The notes under the pieces are model-generated. The model saw only the letters and a program-made list of their open reading frames with translations. It did not search any database and was not told the origin of the DNA. Shown here piece after piece: positions 16,621 to 59,176 of a DNA stretch of 64,000 nucleotides (the first letter of the stretch is position 1; each line of letters starts with the position of its first letter). The translations under genes were made by a program, and so were the position numbers. This DNA comes from Octopus bimaculoides (Eukaryota), in contig NC_068992.1 of assembly GCF_001194135.2 (NCBI RefSeq), positions 65,941,672-66,005,671 on the forward strand, given 5' to 3'.

Positions 16621-16686
16621 ACGCAGTAGGACTGAACATGAAACCAGGTGATTGGAAAGCAAGCTTCTTACCACACAACATCGCGT
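16621..16686 (-). mobile_element. SINE family A head fragment at a gap edge
   Basis: GCAGTAGGACTGAAC...GATTGGAAAGCAAGCTTCTTACCACAC is the reverse complement of the family A head. Confidence 0.7.
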
Positions 16687-28763: not shown

Positions 28764-29166
28764 ATGCAGGATTGACTGAGTGGTAAGTAGCTTGCCTACC
28801 AACTACATTGTTCCAGGTACAGTCCCACTACGTGGCACCTTGAGCATGTGTCTTCTTGTATAGACTCTGGCTGACCAATGCCTTGTGAATGGATTTGGGT
28901 GATTGACACTGAAAGAAGCCCGTTGTATATATATATGCGTATATGTTTGTGTGTGTGTGTTTGTCCCCCACAACCACCACCATCACTTGACAACCGATGT
29001 TGGTTCGTTTACATCCATGTAACTTAGCGGTTTGGCAAAAGAGACAAATTGAATAATTTATAGGCTTACAAAGAATAAGTCATGGGGTCGATTTGTTCAA
29101 CTAAAGGCGATGCTCCAGCATGGCCGCAGTCAAATGACTGAAACAAAAAAAAAAGAATAAAAGAAT
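28764..29166 (+). mobile_element. tRNA-derived SINE family A, full length with internal AT/GT microsatellite
   Basis: Head GAGTGGTAAGTAGCTTGCCTACCAAC...CAGTCCCACTACGTGGCACCTTGAGC...CTGAAAGAAGCCCG, then (AT)(GT)n, then 3' module CTTGACAACCGATGTTGG...CTTACAAAGAATAAGTC...CCAGCATGGCCGCAGTCAAATGACTGAAAC and an (AAGAAT) tail. Confidence 0.85.
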
Positions 29167-32297: not shown

Positions 32298-32442
32298 CGT
32301 AACCTAACGATTCGGCAAAAGAGATCGATAGAATAAATACTAGGCTTACAAAGAATAAGTCCTGAGGTCGATTTTTTCGACTAAAGGTGGTGTTCCAGCA
32401 TGGCTGCAGTCAAATGACTGGAACAAATAAAATAATAAAAAA
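32298..32442 (+). mobile_element. SINE family A, 3' module only
   Basis: CGTAACCTAACGATTCGGCAAAAGAGATCGATAGAATAAATACTAGGCTTACAAAGAATAAGTCC...CCAGCATGGCTGCAGTCAAATGACTGG matches 29020-29150. Confidence 0.8.
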
Positions 32443-34130: not shown

Positions 34131-35745
34131 TTCTCTCTCACACACACACTCACCTTTCTGTTCTTCACAGCGACTTAATTTCACATCGTATATATATATA
34201 TATATATATATACGTGTGTATATACATATACACGTTTATATATATGTATATGTGCGTATACATATATGCCTATATANNNNNNNNNNNNNNNNNNNNNNNN
34301 NNNNNNNNNNNNNNNNNNNNNNNNNNNNNNNNNNNNNNNNNNNNNNNNNNNNNNNNNNNNNNNNNNNNNNNNNNNNNNNNNNNNNNNNNNNNNNNNNNNN
34401 NNNNNNNNNNNNNNNNNNNNNNNNNNNNNNNNNNNNNNNNNNNNNNNNNNNNNNNNNNNNNNNNNNNNNNNNNNNNNNNNNNNNNNNNNNNNNNNNNNNN
34501 NNNNNNNNNNNNNNNNNNNNNNNNNNNNNNNNNNNNNNNNNNNNNNNNNNNNNNNNNNNNNNNNNNNNNNNNNNNNCCATCCCACATAAACAGCTGTTTG
34601 AAGTGATTTCAAAAATTTCCAATCGTTCCCTTTATATATTTCGCCTCTTTCTTCTTTCATACGTTTTAGTATTCTCCCCCTCCACAACCACCATCGCCAG
34701 CACCATCGTCTTTGCCACCATCATCAACTCCACCACCACCGCCACCACCGATCAACCTTGACCACCAACACTCCCACCACTCCCATCGCCCTCAGCACTA
34801 TCCAATCACCACCTCCTTTACCACTGGGTTCTTCAACATCACCATCACCCTCAGTATCATTTTCAATACAATCCCTACCACCACCATCTCCAACAACAAC
34901 ACCACCACCACCATCACCACGATACACTTTAATCAATAGCCCATGCTACAGCCTGTTCCTTTATAACCTACTCCACCCCCTGCTGGAATTGTCCCCTACA
35001 AACCAGTCTAATCTATTCGAGAAGAGCAAGACCCCCACATCAGCACTGACTTTTCTTTAAGTAGATTATTAATTAATTACCAAAAGTGAAACTAATTAAT
35101 TAATTACTATTGTTTCTAATTTAATTTTGCTTTTCTTCTGTTTTCTCAAATAAAGAATTCCTGACAAATTGTGTGGGAACAACGGGTGAGACGCAGCTCA
35201 ATTGTTAAATATATAAATCGCTTTATTTTCTAAAACACTAAAATTTATCAAAATCGTGATCACCACCCCAGAATGATTATCAGAATTATAGCCTCTTTTG
35301 TCCTTGCTCTTCTTCTTCTTTCTTCTCTTTCTTCCTCTTCTTTTCCTCCTCCTACCCCTCTATTTCTTTTTTGTCCTTTTCTTACTTCTACCTCGTCGCT
35401 ATTTTTTTCCCTCCACAACACCATTATGAAGGTCGCTTCTATTATAATTATCTTCAGCGTCATGAAGATAAGTAAACTTCGTAAAGAGATGGCTTAAAAA
35501 GTATGTTTTTCCCTTTTAAGAATTTTATATTTTTATTCACACATGTTTACATACACACACACATATTTTTGTAGGTGTTCTCCCTTCACACTTGCACCGA
35601 TCTTTTTCAGCCATGTTGGTAGTTGAGTGCTGATCATCATCATCATCATCATCATTGTTGTGTTTATAATTATCATTATTAGGAGTTGTAATATAATTAT
35701 TAATATTAGCATTATCATTAACCAATTTTTTTCTTTTGCCTTCAG

Positions 35746-36065
35746 ATGGGTTCCTACGAAGACTCCGATGGTTACAAATACGTCTACACGCTCTACTACA
35801 ACTCATCAGCTGGGAAACTAATTCCTGTTGAGGGTGAAGACGGTAAAACTCGTTATGGAATGGTCATTTTCCAAGGGCTGCTGGCCTTCTGGGGATTTCT
35901 TGCCAACTTAATACTCATTATTGCCCTTGCTTCATCGAAAAGTGCGCGCCGATTGGTCATTACCTTGTACATACTCAGCTTGACCACCATCCAGCTTTTG
36001 ATGTGTGTTGTAAATCTACCATTTGCCGTTTACGATGATCTACACAAATGGAGTTTGGGACAAAG
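35746..36065 (+). CDS. Class A GPCR, coding exon 1 (N-terminus, TM1, TM2, ECL1)
   Basis: ORF MGSYED...GLLAFWGFLANLILIIALA (TM1, N1.50)...LSLTTIQLLMCVVNLPF (TM2)...HKWSLGQ(R). N-glycosylation sequon NSS. Ends at a strong donor CAAAG|GTATGT (36065/36066) after 320 nt (phase 2). The ATG is directly preceded by a polypyrimidine tract and CAG, so it sits at an exon start. Confidence 0.9.
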
Positions 36066-36094
36066 GTATGTATATGATCCGTCAGATGCATTCC

Positions 36095-36460
36095 GGCGCA
36101 GGCGTGGCTGTGTGGTAAGAAGTGTGCTTCCCAGCCGCATGGTTTCGGGTTCAGTCTTCTGCTGTAGCCTCAAGCACCCCGAAGCCTTTGCAGTGGATTT
36201 GGCAAACGGAGACTGAAAGAAACCCTTCGTACAAATGTGTGTGTGTGTATCTTTCTACCCTCCACTAGAGCTTGACAACCGGCGTTGGTGTGTTTGTGTC
36301 CCCCATAACTTAGCGGTTCAGCAAAAGAGAGCAATAGAATAATTACCAGGCTTTAAAATTTAAGTCTTTGTGTCGATTCATTGGACTACAAATTCTTCCA
36401 AGTGGTGCCCCAGCATGACCGCAGTCTAATGATTGAAGCAATTAAAACAAGATGAAAGAT
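36095..36460 (+). mobile_element. SINE family A copy in the GPCR intron, 29 nt after the donor
   Basis: GGCGCAGGCGTGGCTGTGTGGTAAGAAG...GGGTTCAGTC head, CTGAAAGAAACCC, (GT)n, 3' module ...CCAGCATGACCGCAGTCTAATGATTGAAGC. Confidence 0.85.
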
Positions 36461-37030
36461 ATGTGTGTGTGTATGTTCGTGTATGTGTGTGTGTGCGCGC
36501 GCGTGTGTGTACATATTTAAAAGCTTTTACAAAAGATACTCCATACAGCCACCATATTTAAAGAAAGATATTTTTTAGTTATTAATATTTTTTTTAAAAA
36601 CTATATATATATATATACATATACAGGCACGTAAATGTATATGTATATCTGTATACACTGAGAAAGAGGGAGACGTCTATGTTTGTGTATACGTGAATGT
36701 GCGTGTGCTGCCAAAAATATGGACTCATAAAAAGAGGAGGGAGAGGGAGGGAGGGAGGGAGAGAGAGGGCGCAGGAGAATAATGTGTGCCAATGCAGAGA
36801 ACAAGAGAACAATAGTCTTGCAGTGGTTAACCCTCAAACAATGACTTCACAAATATTCCGTCTAATTCTTACCATTCTTCGGTTCTAAACACACACAACC
36901 AGATAACGACTATCACACTCGGCACATCGATATCTCAAAGTCAATACGATCAACTGATCTGCCAATATCGAATTCGACTTTACAATTCGTTCCTCTAGAA
37001 ACATATCAAAGAGATCAATCATTGTATGTA

Positions 37031-37083
<53 letters not shown>

Positions 37084-37178
37084 GTATGCATGTATGTGTA
37101 TATATATATGTATATATACGTATGTATGCATATGTATGTATGTATATATATATATATGTATGTATATATACGTATGTA

Positions 37179-37249
<71 letters not shown>

Positions 37250-37922
37250 GTATGCGTGTATGTGTAATGTGACTCAATTAAATATTGTATTCTATATCAA
37301 CTCACAATATTTCAAAGAACTCGCACCAATACCTCGTCGATTAGCGCCATAGATTCCTTATTAAGTAAGACGTCTTTAAAACAAACAAGAGAACGCTACG
37401 AAGACAAAACAAGGAATTCCGATGGCAACTCTATAATGTGGCATGAATAGAAGAAAGGCGGTCTCGATCGATAATTTCAAACAATGTTATTTTAGACGTA
37501 AACAATTGATGATGTTAAATAATGTTGTGAAACATGTTTAATTAAGATTTAATGCCGCGATAAATGCTGCATAATGATTCCCGGGAAGGAAAAGGTTGAA
37601 GAAGGAAGGGCCTAGAACTAAGCATTACATGCATTGTATATATGTGGGGGGGGGGATGCACGCGCGTGCGTGGGTGTGTGTATGCGTGTATGCATGGGTA
37701 TTTATGCATATATGTTTAATAACAACTTGCCTCTGCTCCATGTTACCCGAAGTTTTGTGGGTGCAGAAAGGCGACTACATCCTCAGACGTACGAAGTCAG
37801 AATCGCAAGAATTTAAAGAGAAAATACTTGGAGCCTATATTTGTCACTAAACAGCAACATCTCTAACATACACACATTCGCATATATATGTATGCGTGCA
37901 TGTGTGTGTGTGTACAAGCATG

Positions 37923-37979
<57 letters not shown>

Positions 37980-38043
37980 CATGGTGTATGTATACACATA
38001 TTACTTGTATGTGTGTGTATACATAGATACGTACATACATACA

Positions 38044-38285
38044 GGCGTATGAGTGGCTGCGTTGTAAGTAGCTTGCTTACCAACCACATGGATCCGGGTT
38101 CAGTCCTACTGCGCGGCACCTTGGACAAGTGTCTTCTACTATAGCCTCAGGCCGACCAATAGAATAAGTACTAGACTTACAAAGAATAATTCCTGGGATC
38201 GATTTGTTCGACTAAAGGCGGTGCTCCAGCATGGCCGCAGTCAAATGACTGAAACAAGTAAAAGAATAAAAGAATAAAAGAATAC
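38044..38285 (+). mobile_element. SINE family A, internally deleted copy in the GPCR intron
   Basis: Head up to GCCGACCAAT joins directly to AGAATAAGTACTAGACTTACAAAGAAT (3' module); ends in (AAGAATA)n. Confidence 0.85.
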
Positions 38286-38531
38286 GTACGTACATACATA
38301 CACATACACACACACACATACATACACATACACACACACACACATACATACACATGCATATGATTATATGTGTATGAAAAAATAAGTTGCATTTCCAAAG
38401 CAGGAGGCAAAAGGTGTGGGGTGGATGGGGAGGAATAAAAGAATTTTGAAGATGGCGATAGCAATCATTCTATCCTGCCATTCGTTATAATATTTTCCTA
38501 ATTTTCTTCTCATTTCCTTTCTCTTTTATAG

Positions 38532-39210
38532 ATTTTGTGAAGCCTGGGTTTTAATGGACGTCACCCTCAGCTGTATTTCTGCTCTGGTCATTGTAATGAT
38601 GAATATCGATCGTTTGATGTTTGTCCTCGATGCGAAACGTTATGTGAAGAACATGAAGGTCATTGCTCTCATTCTGATGGTCATCTTTCCATGGCTGCTC
38701 GGCATTTCATTGGTCATCATTATATGGGTGAAAGGCAAACAGATTTTCCCAGATTTCCCAGGAATGTGCGTCTATGCGCTACACAAAGAATACGCCATGG
38801 TTTCGCCCTTTGTCATGTATTTCATCCCCGCCTTAATTATTCTAGGTCTTACCTTCGCCATACTGGTCACCGTGGTTCTCCATCCTCATCACCGACAACC
38901 TCCAGACGGAACCCATATGTTTGACGAACAAGGTCAACCACAACTTCCGTATCCGTTCCGTGAACACAACTCGCTGTTTTCCGTTTGTTTGGTCAACTTT
39001 TTTTTCCTTGCCATGAGTTTCCCCTACAACTGCGAAAATGCTGTCATGGCCTTTTGTGAGACGGATAATTGCATGCCACCTTCAGATCGGCCCCATATTT
39101 TCTATTTGTTAGGAATATCATTTCTCGGACTAAACCCGCTGCTGTGGTTAACGTACCAGGAGGTCCGTGGTGCTTTTCTCCGAATATTTGAAAATATATG
39201 TAAAAGATAA
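38532..39210 (+). CDS. Class A GPCR, coding exon 2 (TM3-TM7, C-tail); spliced product 332 aa, divergent aminergic (muscarinic/histamine-like) orphan
   Basis: Acceptor TTTCCTTTCTCTTTTATAG|A at 38531/38532 completes AG+A = Arg in frame, giving WSLGQR-FCEAWVLMDVTLSCISALVIVMMNIDRL (C3.25, W3.28, D3.32, DR). Then W4.50 (IFPWLLG), ECL2 Cys, YAMVSPFVMYFIP (P5.50), SFPYN (P6.50), NPLLW (N7.49-P7.50), stop TAA at 39208-39210. Confidence 0.92.
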
Positions 39211-42696: not shown

Positions 42697-42905
42697 TCTC
42701 TTATCTTTTATTCGTTTCAGTCATTAGACCACGGCCATGCTGGGGTACCCGCTTGAAGAAGTTTTAGTCGAATGAATCGACCTCCATATATTTTTTTAAG
42801 CCTGGTACTTATCCTATATTTAGCGGATGTAATCAAACCAACACCGGCTGTCAAGTGGTGAGGGAGGGACAAATGCAAACATTAACACACACACACACAC
42901 ACATA
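42697..42905 (-). mobile_element. SINE family A, 3' module
   Basis: TTTCAGTCATTAGACCACGGCCATGCTGGGG...AAGCCTGGTACTTAT...CCAACACCGGCTGTCAAG is the reverse complement of the 3' module and runs into (CA)n. Confidence 0.8.
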
Positions 42906-57649: not shown

Positions 57650-58640
57650 TATTATTATTATCATCATTATTATTACTATTATTATTATTAAAAATAATAC
57701 TATTTTTTTCATTTGCATCTTTTGTCAATTCCGTTTCCATTTCTTGCCGAGTGTCTTCGTGACACCTAGGGTAGAGAAACGTACTGTATACATTGGTAGG
57801 CCATTAAAACAAGCACACCTCATTGTTCATTTAGAGAGTCATATGATAGAGAAGAGGAAGACAGACCTCAAGAGACAAAAAGTTAGAAGTCCATTTTGGT
57901 GTTAAAGCTAGGGTGTCATATATTTGGTTTTGCACAAAGTATTGTTCTAGAGAATGTTTAAGAAAGCATAAGAAAATTATGTGTTTGTTTTAAAATTTGA
58001 GATTACACAGAAAGTATTTTGCGTAGGATATGGGCAGTTCCCATGAGCACTATCTTTTGAATTTCTGTCATTTTGAGGTTTCCTGGTATCTGAGCTAGGT
58101 AGCAATCAGCCCCTTTTGCTATCATTCCTAGGGCACCTATGACAACAGGTATTGTTTTAGTCTTCAGGTTGCACATTTTGCCAATTTCTATTTCAAGATC
58201 TTTATACTTTCTCAGTTTTTGGTTAGCCTTGACAGATACATTTATGTCGACTGAGACAGTCATATCAATGAGGAGGCATGATTTTTGTCTGAAGTCTTTC
58301 AATATAATGTCTGGCCTATTCGTATCTGTCTTTCTCTCAGTTTCAATGGTGAAGTTCCGGAGGAGTGAGAGGTGATCATTTTCAAGCACTGGAGGTAGTT
58401 TGTGTTCCCACCAATTTTATCATGGGGCAGGTCCAATGTTTTGCAAATTACCCAGTGAATATACTGTGCTGCTCTATCATGCCTGTTGAGATACTCTGTA
58501 GGTGCAAGAAGACTGCACATGGAGACAATATTATCAATGGTTTCATTTTGTTGTTCACATACACATGTTGGGCTACTGCCGTTCTGTAAAATGTTGGCCT
58601 GGTAGTTTCTTGTGGGTAGGCATTGATTTTGATAGACCAT
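57650..58640 (-). mobile_element. 5'-truncated R4/Dong-like non-LTR retrotransposon (restriction-like endonuclease), with 3' UTR and (TAA)n tail
   Basis: QNQCLPTRNYQ...CVCEQQNETIDNIVSMC (degenerate CCHC)...RHDRAAQYIHW, a 1-nt frameshift near 58415, then WEHKLPPVLEND...NRPDII...LLIDMT...KYKDLEIEI...IPVVIGALG...LMGTAHILRKILSV* (stop at 58003). About 310 nt of 3' UTR ends in TAA repeats at 57650-57690. Confidence 0.88.
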
Positions 58641-59176
58641 TTCTTTCCAGAAATAAAACATTCTTGAACATCTTTTCGTTAATACCACTGCCCTTCAGAA
58701 TTTCAAGATGGCTACTAATCTAAATGATCCTACGAGCAATACAAGTAGAAAACCTTCTCTTTTTTTTACCTCAAATAAATAATCAGGTTTAAACAGGCTC
58801 CCTGTAAAGAAGACCAGCGAAAATGTTTGTGGAGTTTCCTCCCTTGAAAATCTTCTTTAAAAAGAAATAGAAATCGCCATTAAAGAATTGCATAAATTAC
58901 TTTTGCAGTATTTCATTTCTGCATTTTATTTTATTTTCACTTTATTTGTTATTTGTTATCTCGTAAAACTGAGCTTTAAGTTCCAAGTCACTGGAAAACA
59001 TCTATCTTCCCGCATATCATTGTCTATCTATTAACCTTTCCATTTACTTTATCTCTTTACCTATTTAACCTCCTTCTTTCTCTCTCTTCCACTTTCTCTT
59101 CTCTCTATCTTTCTCTTCCTCTGTCTCTCCACCTCTCTCCATGTCTTTCCTTTCCCTCCCACCCAGTCTTCCTCTC

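What the first reader, a model, noticed from the sequence alone, without database searches (positions are those of the whole stretch)
35746..39210. Muscarinic/histamine-like GPCR that keeps the amine pocket but has lost the activation microswitches
Seen in the spliced 332-aa protein (manual Ballesteros-Weinstein numbering). Ligand-side aminergic residues are retained: W3.28, D3.32, S3.36, Y5.38, S5.42. TM6-ECL3 reads SFPYN...AFCETDNCMP, resembling the muscarinic WxPYN...TFCxxCIP signature (Y6.51, N6.52, two ECL3 cysteines). The switch residues are replaced: D2.50->Q (sodium site), DRY->DRL, W6.48->S, W7.40->L, Y7.43->I, NPxxY->NPLLW. ICL3 is only about 35 aa, whereas muscarinic receptors have very long ICL3s. 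The ORF is intact with canonical splice sites, so this looks like a functional but rewired receptor: a new amine or quaternary-amine ligand, atypical/constitutive signalling, or a scavenger or chemosensory role. Octopus chemotactile receptors were recruited from nicotinic acetylcholine receptors (established); a repurposed muscarinic-like GPCR would be a parallel (inference).
Basis: partly seen in the sequence, partly recalled or inferred. Interest (0 to 1): 0.72.

Follow-up and report, generated by a model that had tools for sequence, protein, structure and literature searches.

The report
Divergent orphan amine-like receptor of cephalopods
This is an intact, strongly conserved two-exon octopus gene for an orphan receptor that belongs to a little-studied mollusc and annelid branch of the monoamine-receptor family, not a repurposed muscarinic or histamine receptor, and most of its "lost switches" are old traits of that branch.

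Summary
The sequence observation is correct.

- **Not muscarinic or histamine-like.** Sequence, profile and fold searches all put adrenergic, 5-HT and dopamine receptors first.
- **Family membership.** The protein belongs to a clade found in bivalves, gastropods, an octopod paralogue and an annelid. That clade already has DR[L/F] instead of DRY, xPxxW instead of NPxxY, no Y5.58, often N2.50, and short ICL3. It scores 279 bits against this family's profile and 156 against canonical amine receptors.
- **Lineage-specific changes.** Only Q2.50, S6.48, N6.52, Y7.39, L7.40 and I7.43 are particular to this gene. All are identical in a Sepia esculenta larval transcript (81% identity), so they probably go back to the common ancestor of octopuses and cuttlefish.
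- **Selection.** dN/dS against Octopus sinensis is 0.026, so this is not a pseudogene.
- **No sign of chemosensory expansion.** The gene is single-copy with 1:1 orthologues.

The most likely reading is a functional receptor for a small cationic ligand with non-canonical activation. Ligand and coupling are unknown. Interest is moderate to low.

The parts
35719..35721 (+). In-frame stop codon 9 codons upstream of the start codon
   Evidence: The Sepia mRNA has an in-frame TGA 2 codons upstream of its ATG (L001 964-966), which fixes the N-terminus.
35746..36065 (+). Coding exon 1 (residues 1-106 plus 2 nt of codon 107). It covers the Tyr/Asp/Glu-rich N-terminus with an N19-S-S glycosylation sequon, TM1 (N54 = 1.50), TM2 (Q83 = 2.50, codon 35992-35994) and ECL1 (W102).
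   Evidence: The same exon is found in O. sinensis at L002 10001-10320.
36066..38531 (+). Phase-2 intron (GTATGT...TTTTATAG), 2466 nt, filled with microsatellites and two SINE-like repeat copies. It lies just before C3.25.
   Evidence: The orthologous intron in O. sinensis is 4.57 kb with the same GT..AG ends. Four relatives have a single-exon CDS.
36086..36440 (+). SINE-like interspersed repeat inside the intron
   Evidence: One search found further copies at about 28770-29166, 32328-32440, 42697-42817, 16622-16677 and 38041-38275. There is no tRNA or Rfam match.
38041..38275 (+). Second copy of the SINE-like repeat inside the intron
38532..39210 (+). Coding exon 2 (last nt of codon 107 through residue 332, then TAA at 39208-39210). 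It covers TM3 to helix 8.
   Evidence: The AlphaFold model shows 7 TM helices plus H8 (pLDDT 83.7, pTM 0.84).
38557..38559 (+). Codon for D116 = D3.32, the amine-counterion position. It is invariant in the 27-sequence family alignment.
38608..38616 (+). D133-R134-L135 (DRL in place of DRY)
   Evidence: Among 39 relatives, position 3.51 is L in 20, F in 11, V in 4 and M in 2.
39016..39030 (+). S269-F-P-Y-N273 (S6.48, P6.50, Y6.51, N6.52)
   Evidence: W6.48 is present in 28 of 39 relatives, and N6.52 is not among the six commonest residues there. Both residues are identical in Sepia.
39049..39078 (+). A280-FCETDNCMP289, the ECL3 two-cysteine motif
   Evidence: The motif is shared with 5-HT1A and alpha2B and with most relatives.
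39133..39147 (+). N308-P-L-L-W312 (NPxxW in place of NPxxY)
   Evidence: W7.53 is present in 32 of 39 relatives.

Best explanation
The locus encodes a functional, single-copy orphan class A GPCR. It is shared by octopus and cuttlefish, so probably coleoid-wide. It belongs to a lophotrochozoan clade that branched from the monoamine-receptor group and has a non-canonical intracellular motif set.

**Shown**
- The gene model is correct.
- The gene is under strong purifying selection.
- An orthologue is transcribed in Sepia larvae.
- The gene belongs to the clade defined by DR[L/F/M], no Y5.58, xPxxW, M/L6.47, frequent N2.50 and short ICL3.
- The aminergic anchor residues are retained across the clade: D3.32 is invariant in the 27-sequence alignment and W3.28 is usual.

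**Inferred**
- The ligand is a small cationic molecule (an amine or quaternary amine) that pairs with D3.32. The pocket would be lined by W3.28, S3.36, S5.42, Y6.51, N6.52, N6.55 and Y7.39.
- The resting state is held by the retained R3.50-E6.30 pair.
- Activation proceeds without the sodium site (Q2.50), without the W6.48 toggle (S) and without the Y5.58-Y7.53 water bridge. W7.53, which is nearly invariant in the family, would take over the TM7 role.
- After the family-level rewiring, the lineage leading to Octopus and Sepia changed a second set of core and pocket positions (Q2.50, S6.48, N6.52, Y7.39, L7.40, I7.43). It also acquired an intron (shown only for Octopus) and lost the C-terminal tail. 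It then froze, which looks like a shift of ligand or efficacy followed by conservation since that ancestor.

Ligand identity, G-protein coupling and tissue of expression are not known.
For: **Gene model and start codon:**

**Fold**
- Class A fold: Pfam 7tm_1 at 5.9e-26.
- AlphaFold pLDDT 83.7 and pTM 0.84, with seven helices plus H8.
- The best Foldseek matches are beta1, alpha1A, 5-HT1A and D1.

**Selection**
- Against O. sinensis there are 21 synonymous and 2 non-synonymous changes, dN/dS 0.026. Flanking and intron DNA is only 84-92% identical.
- Against Sepia, amino-acid identity is 81%, pN is 0.107 and pS is 0.82 (saturated).
- TM3, TM6 and TM7 are 89-95% identical between the two.

**Expression**
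- The Sepia orthologue is an uninterrupted 999-nt ORF on a contig assembled from SRR19578100.
- That run is RNA-seq of S. esculenta larvae (PMC10141105).

**Family membership**
- An exhaustive HMMER search puts about 35 full-length, 320-400 aa, short-ICL3 proteins at 1e-37 to 1e-15, ahead of the first canonical DRY/NPxxY receptors at about 1e-14.
- A profile built from 39 relatives, without the query or Sepia, scores the query at 278.9 bits. The profile from 82 canonical amine receptors scores it at 156.1. With 13 diagnostic residues masked the scores are 253.1 and 141.5.
- In NJ bootstraps made without the motif columns, the query's neighbourhood of at least 10 tips is 100% family in 85 of 100 replicates and at least 90% family in all.

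**Taxa:** scallops, a unionid, a pearl oyster, abalone, Elysia, Arion, Argonauta and the annelid Owenia.

**Residue statistics:**. All 36 tabulated positions except 6.55 are identical between Octopus and Sepia.
Against: - No functional data exist for any member of the clade, so the ligand class and G-protein signalling are inferences from retained residues.
- Loss of D2.50, W6.48, Y5.58 and Y7.53 together could equally mean weak or absent G-protein coupling.
- The tail-less C-terminus and the ICL3, which has few Ser/Thr, leave few phosphorylation sites.
- The query and Sepia sit on a long branch next to other long branches, so the exact position inside the clade is not resolved. The exact 41-taxon split has only 34% NJ bootstrap support.
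- Only about 14 of the 39 relatives could be assigned to a species.
- The NCBI model for O. sinensis starts at the ATG with no UTR. Expression in Octopus itself was not shown here.
Confidence: 0.6

Rival explanations
1. One reading: a muscarinic- or histamine-derived receptor that octopus has repurposed, for example for chemosensation, in parallel with the nicotinic-derived chemotactile receptors.
For: - Y6.51, N6.52 and Y7.39 coincide with muscarinic pocket residues.
- The ECL3 double cysteine and D3.32 are present.
- Pfam gives a weak secondary hit to the nematode chemoreceptor family Srsx (1.1e-06).
Against: - No preferential similarity to muscarinic or histamine receptors was found in phmmer, the profile search or Foldseek.
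- The ECL3 motif is general among aminergic receptors.
- V3.33, S6.48 and I7.43 break the muscarinic aromatic cage, and M5.46 replaces the H3/H4 glutamate (receptor roles from established knowledge).
- The gene is not octopus-specific. Sepia has an 81% identical orthologue with the same residues.
- It is single-copy, with no paralogue in 64 kb, and has dN/dS 0.026. The lophotrochozoan candidate chemoreceptor expansions are tandem clusters without 1:1 orthologues (PMC11886862).
Confidence: 0.05
2. A receptor that does not signal through G proteins in the usual ligand-gated way. It could be constitutively active, a ligand sink or decoy, or a partner that modulates another receptor.
For: - Q2.50, S6.48, T5.58, L3.51 and W7.53 are all missing or altered at once.
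- Only 24 residues follow P7.50, the shortest such tail among the family sequences compared.
- From established GPCR knowledge, DRY and NPxxY changes characterise atypical chemokine receptors, and D2.50 or W6.48 changes often alter basal activity.
Against: - R3.50 and E6.30 (the ionic-lock pair), D3.49, P5.50, F6.44 and N7.49-P7.50 are retained.
- D3.32 and pocket residues are conserved between Octopus and Sepia, which argues that ligand binding matters.
- A decoy that acts through arrestin would be expected to keep a phosphorylatable tail, and this protein has none.
- W7.53 is conserved family-wide (32/39). That looks like a selected alternative rather than decay.
Confidence: 0.2
3. A receptor for a non-amine ligand such as a peptide or protein. 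The conserved Tyr/Asp/Glu-rich N-terminus, which resembles tyrosine-sulfation sites, would capture a basic ligand, and D3.32 would have a structural role or bind a basic side chain.
For: - The last 35 N-terminal residues contain 8.0% Tyr in the family against 2.4% in canonical amine receptors (Mann-Whitney p = 2e-7). They also contain more Asp and Glu (18% against 13%).
- The query has 7 Tyr in its first 18 residues.
- Sulfotyrosine N-termini are a known feature of chemokine and some peptide receptors (established knowledge).
Against: - The closest solved structures and sequences are all small-molecule monoamine receptors.
- The N-terminus is short (about 35 aa) and is modelled with low confidence.
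- No sulfation evidence exists.
- The TM3-6-7 pocket is the best-conserved region.
Confidence: 0.1
4. A decaying or non-functional gene, that is a pseudogene or an annotation artefact.
For: - There are many departures from class A consensus motifs.
- The NCBI model for O. sinensis has no annotated UTRs.
Against: - The ORF is intact in three species.
- dN/dS is 0.026 while neighbouring non-coding DNA has diverged by 8-16%.
- Codon positions differ by 18%, 7% and 55% against Sepia.
- The transcript is present in Sepia larval RNA-seq.
Confidence: 0.02

Closest known systems
Canonical bilaterian monoamine GPCRs (5-HT1A/2A, D1/D2 dopamine, alpha and beta adrenergic)
   Same: - These are the best matches by sequence (5e-14 to 1e-11), by family profile (1e-51 to 1e-45) and by fold (TM-score 0.70-0.76).
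- Shared features are the C3.25-ECL2 cysteine pair, W3.28, D3.32, S3.39, S5.42, P5.50, F6.44, P6.50, the ECL3 double cysteine, N7.49-P7.50 and E6.30.
   Different: - Missing are D2.50, Y3.51, Y5.58, C6.47-W6.48, W7.40, Y7.43 and Y7.53.
- T3.37 is C and I3.40 is A.
- ICL3 is very short and there is no C-tail.
- The protein scores 123 bits lower against the canonical profile than against the non-canonical clade.
The uncharacterised lophotrochozoan clade found here. Example entries, all automatic names: XP_069137436 Argopecten 'beta-3 adrenergic receptor-like', XP_046559082 Haliotis '5-HT1B-like', KAL3866993 Sinanodonta, KAK3108462 Pinctada, GAB1597736 Argonauta 'histamine H2 receptor-like', CAH1797106 Owenia.
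   Same: DR[L/F/M], xPxxW, no Y5.58, M/L6.47, N/Q/D2.50, D3.32, W3.28, an S-P at 5.42-5.43, Y/F6.51, the ECL3 C-x3-4-C-x-P motif, a Tyr/acid-rich N-terminus, short ICL3 and a length of 320-400 aa.
   Different: - Identity is only 20-30%.
- The Octopus and Sepia proteins alone combine Q2.50, S6.48, N6.52, L7.40 and I7.43. They keep S2.45, S3.36, Y5.38, E6.30 and N7.49.
- The Octopus gene has an intron, whereas four relatives have a single-exon CDS.
- It lacks the C-terminal tail, which in several relatives ends in E-T-F-V/L.
Muscarinic acetylcholine receptors
   Same: D3.32, Y6.51, N6.52, Y7.39 and two ECL3 cysteines.
   Different: - V3.33, S6.48, I7.43 and L7.40 replace the remaining cage and lid residues.
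- ICL3 is about 23 aa, whereas muscarinic ICL3s are very long.
- M4 is only the 39th-ranked distinct PDB sequence (2e-10).
- No muscarinic receptor appears in the top 60 profile hits or the top 50 fold hits.
Lophotrochozoan lineage-specific class A expansions proposed as chemoreceptors (Nath et al. 2025, PMC11886862) and Aplysia AcCR families (Cummins et al. 2009, PMC2700072)
   Same: Short, orphan, rhodopsin-like mollusc receptors. Some bivalve and gastropod members of the clade found here may belong to such expansions.
   Different: - Those expansions lack 1:1 orthologues and sit in tandem arrays.
- AcCRs carry an ERC motif in a FITAFITFERCLCIA signature.
- This gene is single-copy, has slowly evolving 1:1 orthologues and reads NIDRLMF.
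Vertebrate trace-amine-associated receptors, as a functional analogy only
   Same: An amine-receptor offshoot that keeps D3.32 while shifting ligand range (established knowledge).
   Different: - TAARs keep DRY and NPxxY (established knowledge).
- No TAAR structure appears among the top 60 listed PDB sequence hits or the top 50 listed fold hits.
- There is no expansion here.

Membership tests
Class A (rhodopsin-like) GPCR, Pfam PF00001 | Profile match above the curated threshold | tested here: met
   91.9 bits against a cut-off of 30.5, residues 54-311 matching model positions 2-259 of 260
Class A (rhodopsin-like) GPCR, Pfam PF00001 | Seven TM helices plus helix 8 with the anchor residues N1.50, W4.50, P5.50, P6.50, P7.50 and the C3.25/ECL2 cysteine pair | tested here: met
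   The AlphaFold model has 7 helices plus H8, pLDDT 83.7. The anchors and C109/C186 are invariant in alignment A2. The disulfide itself was not testable.
Canonical monoamine (aminergic) receptors | D3.32 counter-ion with W3.28 | tested here: met
   D116 and W112
Canonical monoamine (aminergic) receptors | W7.40 and Y7.43 in TM7, and C6.47-W6.48-x-P in TM6 | tested here: not met
   The query has L7.40, I7.43, M6.47 and S6.48. The 82 canonical hits have W7.40 in 69, Y7.43 in 60, C6.47 in 71 and W6.48 in 77.
Canonical monoamine (aminergic) receptors | D2.50, DRY (Y3.51), Y5.58 and NPxxY (Y7.53) activation motifs | tested here: not met
   Q2.50, L3.51, T5.58 and W7.53
Canonical monoamine (aminergic) receptors | Scores best against a profile of canonical members | tested here: not met
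   156.1 bits against the canonical profile and 278.9 bits against the non-canonical clade profile. Leave-one-out controls classify correctly in both directions.
Muscarinic acetylcholine receptors | Aromatic cage Y3.33, W6.48, Y6.51, Y7.39, Y7.43 plus N6.52 (feature list from established knowledge) | tested here: not met
   Y6.51, N6.52 and Y7.39 are present. V3.33, S6.48 and I7.43 are not.
Muscarinic acetylcholine receptors | Closest sequence or fold relatives are muscarinic, and ICL3 is long | tested here: not met
   M4 appears at 2e-10, behind 38 adrenergic, 5-HT, dopamine and H2 entries. No muscarinic receptor is in the profile top 60 or the Foldseek top 50. ICL3 is 23 aa.
Histamine H3/H4-type receptors | E5.46 partner for the imidazole (established knowledge), and closest similarity to histamine receptors | tested here: not met
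   M5.46. H4 appears at about 4e-10 and H2 at 5e-12, neither of them top.
   DRL, T5.58, W7.53 and M6.47. Frequencies among the 39 relatives are.
   With 13 diagnostic residues masked, the scores are 253.1 against 141.5 bits. In NJ bootstraps without the motif columns the neighbourhood is 100% family in 85 of 100 replicates. The exact clade split has only 34% support.
   The query has S6.48 and L7.40, against W in 28/39 and 32/39 relatives. It has a 2.47-kb intron, whereas four of four relatives tested have an intronless CDS. These are lineage-specific departures rather than grounds for exclusion.
Lineage-specific chemoreceptor expansions of Lophotrochozoa (PMC11886862) and Aplysia AcCRs (PMC2700072) | Tandem multi-copy arrays without 1:1 orthologues; for AcCRs, an ERC motif | tested here: not met
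   There is no paralogue in the 64-kb window. 1:1 orthologues exist in O. sinensis and Sepia. The motif is DRL, not ERC.
Functional amine-activated, G-protein-coupled receptor | Ligand-evoked second-messenger response | not testable with these tools
   This needs heterologous expression. Only selection and residue conservation are available.

The most novel reading that the evidence does not exclude
The non-canonical clade could be an unrecognised lophotrochozoan transmitter-receptor class that activates without the sodium site, the W6.48 toggle or the Y5.58-Y7.53 bridge, using W7.53 instead. The coleoid member would be a neofunctionalised copy retuned before octopuses and cuttlefish diverged to a new cationic ligand. 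The convergent Y6.51/N6.52/Y7.39 trio would fit a choline-like or ester-bearing quaternary amine.
Probability: 0.2. Interest if true: 0.6.

Novelty: new variant of a known kind. Interest (0 to 1): 0.35.

Why it matters
If the clade signals, it is a natural experiment in class A activation. Dozens of mollusc and annelid receptors, plus a coleoid orthologue conserved between octopus and cuttlefish, keep the amine counter-ion. Yet they replace nearly every textbook microswitch: DRY tyrosine, Y5.58, NPxxY tyrosine, often D2.50, and in cephalopods also W6.48.

Deorphanising one member would add a transmitter or modulator pathway to cephalopod neurobiology. It would also show how W7.53 substitutes for Y7.53.

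If the clade does not signal, it is one more divergent invertebrate orphan. In either case, the automatic names now in the databases ('dopamine receptor 1-like', '5-HT1B-like', 'histamine H2-like', 'beta-3 adrenergic-like') are misleading and should not be used to infer a ligand.

Tried and rejected
- **Word-indexed protein search.** The single-sequence search found only the O. sinensis and Sepia orthologues. The profile search added only unnamed ENA proteins, so it gave no taxonomy. The exhaustive HMMER search was what revealed the family.
- **L-INS-i alignment** of 151 sequences timed out. I used MAFFT --auto instead.
- **Exact monophyly of the 41 non-canonical sequences** has only 34% NJ bootstrap support once the motif columns are removed. 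I therefore rely on neighbourhood composition and on the profile-score contrast. No maximum-likelihood tool was available.
- **Was the Sepia contig genomic rather than mRNA?** Its flanks show no homology to the octopus locus beyond microsatellite matches, so the sequence alone was inconclusive. The question was settled when the run accession was found in the data-availability statement of a larval RNA-seq paper. Whether the Sepia gene has the intron remains unknown.
- **Literature searches.** 'NPxxW' returned 0 papers. Searches for mollusc orphan monoamine receptors and cephalopod GPCR repertoires found no description of this clade.
  - The closest leads are the lophotrochozoan class A survey (PMC11886862) and a mollusc-only 'biogenic amine' orthogroup mentioned in the Lymnaea genome paper (PMC11589774). 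I could not link that orthogroup to this clade.
  - Aplysia AcCRs were rejected on their ERC signature.
  - The GPR21/52/61/101/161 orphan group and TAARs were considered. Neither appears among the top 60 listed PDB sequence matches or the top 50 listed fold matches.
- **Paralogue search.** tblastn of the window found none.
- **tRNA and Rfam scans of the window** were empty.
- **Pfam scan of the two ORFs at 58003-58688** found nothing.

Full report
**1. What is in the sequence**

The region holds a two-exon gene on the + strand.
- Exon 1: 35746-36065, starting at the ATG and followed by GTATGT.
- Intron: 36066-38531 (2466 nt), ending TTTTATAG.
- Exon 2: 38532-39210, ending TAA.
- The spliced CDS is 999 nt and encodes 332 aa. 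Codon 107 is split AG|A (phase 2).

The start codon is well fixed. An in-frame stop lies 9 codons upstream here and 2 codons upstream in the cuttlefish mRNA.

tblastn of the protein against the whole 64-kb window finds only these two exons, so there is no tandem paralogue. The rest of the window is microsatellites, N-gaps and interspersed repeats.

Pfam 7tm_1 matches residues 54-311 almost end to end (5.9e-26).

**2. Checking the residues**

I anchored Ballesteros-Weinstein numbers on N54, R134, W161, P206, P271 and P309. I checked them against HMMER alignments to alpha2B and 5-HT1A and a MAFFT alignment with 150 homologues.

- W3.28, D3.32, S3.36, Y5.38, S5.42
- S6.48-F-P-Y6.51-N6.52
- ECL3 AFCETDNCMP
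- Q2.50, DRL, L7.40, I7.43, NPLLW

- T5.58 instead of Y, and A3.40 instead of I
- E6.30 and R3.50 both kept, so the ionic-lock pair is intact
- Y7.39 present
- P at 5.43
- The protein ends right after helix 8 (...FENICKR), only 24 residues after P7.50

An AlphaFold model built on a 27-sequence family alignment has pLDDT 83.7 and pTM 0.84. It shows seven helices plus H8 and a 23-residue ICL3.

**3. Is it a live gene?**

Yes.

*Octopus sinensis.* It has the same two-exon gene on chromosome CM016870.1, annotated 'dopamine receptor 1-like', 332 aa, 99% identical.
- Surrounding and intronic DNA is only 84-92% identical between the two species, and the intron differs in length (4.57 against 2.47 kb). 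The window is therefore from a different Octopus species.
- The CDS is nevertheless 97.7% identical, with 21 synonymous and 2 non-synonymous differences.
- This gives dS 0.10, dN 0.0026 and dN/dS 0.026.

*Sepia esculenta.* A second orthologue (P0002, 332 aa, 81% identity, no indels) sits as an uninterrupted ORF on a 3.1-kb contig assembled from SRR19578100.
- That run is listed in the data-availability statement of an RNA-seq study of Sepia esculenta larvae (PMC10141105).
- The gene is therefore transcribed in cuttlefish hatchlings. Its sequence is compatible with the predicted splice junction.
- Shared by an octopus and a cuttlefish, the gene probably dates to their common ancestor.
- Codon positions 1, 2 and 3 differ by 18%, 7% and 55% (pN 0.107; synonymous sites saturated).
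- All 36 tabulated functional positions are identical in Octopus and Sepia except 6.55, which is N or S.
- TM3, TM6 and TM7 are the best-conserved segments at 89-95%.

**4. What family is it?**

*Not muscarinic or histamine.*
- phmmer against all PDB chains ranks alpha2, 5-HT1A, D1, alpha1, H2 and beta1 first (5e-14 to 1e-11). M4 comes at 2e-10 and H4 at 4e-10.
- A family profile gives 5-HT1A, 5-HT2A, D2, D1, alpha2 and beta1 at 1e-51 to 1e-45, with no muscarinic or histamine entry in the top 60.
- Foldseek with the model gives beta1, alpha1A, 5-HT1A, D1 and beta2 in the top 50.
It is also common in the relatives.

*The exhaustive search.* HMMER against 1.84 billion representatives was decisive.
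- After the Sepia orthologue come about 35 full-length proteins of 320-400 aa at E 1e-37 to 1e-15, with 25-30% identity over the whole length.
- The first canonical DRY/NPxxY amine receptors appear only at about 1e-14.

*Shared traits.* In the residue table, 41 full-length sequences including the query lack all three of Y3.51, Y5.58 and Y7.53. Among the 39 relatives:

| Position | State in the 39 relatives |
|---|---|
| 3.51 | L 20, F 11, V 4, M 2 |
| 7.53 | W 32 |
| 5.58 | T, N, I or S |
| 6.47 | M or L in 32 (C in 71 of 82 canonical) |
| 2.50 | N 17, D 15, Q 3 |
| 2.45 | N 34 (S in 63 of 82 canonical) |
| 6.30 | not acidic in the commonest states |
| 3.32 | D 30 (invariant in the 27-sequence alignment) |
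| 3.28 | W 31 |
| 6.48 | W 28 |
| 7.40 | W 32 |

*Tests of membership.*
- NJ places all 41 in one clade.
- With nine motif columns removed, the exact split recurs in only 34 of 100 bootstraps. However, the query's neighbourhood of at least 10 tips is purely family in 85 of 100 replicates and at least 90% family in all.
- A profile built from the 39 relatives, without the query or Sepia, scores the query at 278.9 bits. A profile of the 82 canonical receptors scores it at 156.1.
- With 13 diagnostic residues masked, the scores are 253.1 and 141.5. Leave-one-out controls classify correctly in both directions.

*Taxa.* Named members come from:
- Bivalves: scallops (Argopecten, Pecten, Ylistrum), Sinanodonta and Pinctada
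- Gastropods: Haliotis, Elysia and Arion
- A cephalopod: the octopod Argonauta hians, a distinct paralogue with E3.32, DHL and R6.48
- An annelid: Owenia fusiformis

Their automatic names disagree wildly (5-HT1B/1D/5B-like, beta-1/beta-3 adrenergic-like, alpha-1D, histamine H2-like, dopamine receptor 1-like). That is what one expects of an uncharacterised clade roughly equidistant from all named amine receptors.

**5. Consequence for the finding**

That is largely what happens.
- DRL, NPxxW, the missing Y5.58, the short ICL3 and loss of D2.50 are old family traits, not an octopus innovation.
- What remains specific to the Octopus and Sepia genes is a second layer: Q (rather than N or D) at 2.50, S6.48, N6.52, Y7.39, L7.40 and I7.43.
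- Other lineage-specific features are E6.30, loss of the C-tail and, in Octopus, an intron. Four of four relatives examined at genome level have a single-exon CDS: Argopecten, Argonauta paralogue, Owenia and Haliotis.
- The Octopus-Sepia pair sits on a long stem with very short tips. The corrected distance between Octopus and Sepia is 0.21, against at least 1.6 to any relative. This fits a burst of change before the two lineages split, followed by strong constraint.

**6. How it most likely works**

*Shown:* a class A fold, a conserved orthosteric-pocket region, strong purifying selection and transcription in Sepia larvae.

*Inferred from established GPCR knowledge:*
- D3.32 with W3.28, Y6.51 and Y7.39 and the polar S3.36, S5.42, N6.52 and N6.55 would bind a small cationic ligand.
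- R3.50-E6.30 would hold the inactive state.
- Activation must bypass the sodium pocket (Q2.50), the W6.48 toggle and the Y5.58-Y7.53 bridge. The near-invariant W7.53 of the clade is the obvious candidate for the substitute TM7 switch.

The absence of a C-tail and the sparse Ser/Thr in ICL3 make classical arrestin-driven scavenging less likely.

My estimates:

| Claim | Probability |
|---|---|
| Clade membership | about 0.9 |
| Gene is functional (under selection) | about 0.95 |
| Ligand is a small amine | about 0.5 |
| Conventional G-protein coupling | about 0.5 |

**7. Comparison with the literature**

I found no paper describing this clade.
- 'NPxxW' returns nothing.
- The lophotrochozoan class A survey (PMC11886862) treats lineage-specific expansions as candidate chemoreceptors. 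It reports that they lack 1:1 orthologues and are reduced in cephalopods. This gene does not fit that pattern.
- Aplysia AcCR chemoreceptors carry an ERC signature (PMC2700072), so they are a different family.
- The Lymnaea genome paper mentions a mollusc-only 'biogenic amine' orthogroup annotated mostly as muscarinic (PMC11589774). It may overlap this clade, but I could not test that.

**8. Verdict**

This is an ordinary-looking but real orphan receptor. The headline 'muscarinic-like receptor that lost its switches in octopus' does not survive. The better description is a member, shared by octopus and cuttlefish, of a lophotrochozoan monoamine-like clade with a systematically non-canonical activation motif set, plus a further layer of lineage-specific core changes.

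This is moderately interesting for GPCR evolution and for cephalopod neurochemistry, and it is testable by deorphanisation. It is not a surprise of high order.

Noticed in passing
window 36066-38531; loci L003-L006: The Octopus gene has a phase-2 intron just before C3.25 (2.47 kb here, 4.57 kb in O. sinensis). The CDS is a single exon in all four relatives checked: Argopecten, the Argonauta paralogue, Owenia and Haliotis. This looks like an intron gain in the cephalopod lineage. Whether Sepia has the intron is unknown, because only its mRNA was seen.
   Followed up: partly
window 35746-35850 (residues 1-35); alignment A2 columns 54-140: N-termini across the clade are rich in Tyr and Asp/Glu, for example YEDSDGYKYVYTLYY here and YDYGFDYGYDYE or YLYYDDEDY in relatives. 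Tyr makes up 8.0% against 2.4% in canonical amine receptors (p = 2e-7). The pattern resembles tyrosine-sulfation sites of chemokine-type receptors. No function has been tested.
   Followed up: partly
C-termini of relatives P0008, P0012, P0013, P0025, P0032, P0003, P0007: Several bivalve or gastropod-type relatives end in E-E-T-F-V/L, E-V-T-Y-L or P-L-(M/L)-E-L. These look like PDZ-ligand-type C-terminal motifs. The Octopus and Sepia proteins have no tail at all after helix 8.
   Followed up: no
window 36086-36440 and 38041-38275; also about 28770-29166, 32328-32440, 42697-42817, 16622-16677: A SINE-like interspersed repeat occurs twice inside the intron and at least four more times in the window, at 66-89% identity. 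ARAGORN and Rfam find no tRNA or known RNA family in it.
   Followed up: partly
window 58003-58688, minus strand: Two overlapping ORFs of about 128 aa are the only other non-repetitive long ORFs in the window. By eye they resemble the tail of a retrotransposon ORF (…IPVVIGALGMIAKGADCYLAQIPGNL…). Pfam finds nothing.
   Followed up: partly
whole window: The window has 20 runs of N (10-934 nt), mostly flanked by TA/TG/CA microsatellites, and 30.5% GC. Non-coding identity to O. sinensis chromosome CM016870.1 is only 84-92%. The window is therefore from a congeneric but different Octopus species with a gap-rich assembly.
   Followed up: partly
P0035 / L004 (Argonauta hians BAAFZT010000002.1): Octopods carry at least one further, very divergent member of the same clade (383 aa, E3.32, D-H-L, R6.48, NPxxW, intronless), annotated 'histamine H2 receptor-like'. 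It groups with the query only among long branches.
   Followed up: no
P0004 (92 aa): A 92-aa database protein is 97% identical to residues 86-151 and then diverges. It is probably a mis-spliced or truncated gene model of the same locus in another octopus assembly, spanning the exon junction.
   Followed up: no
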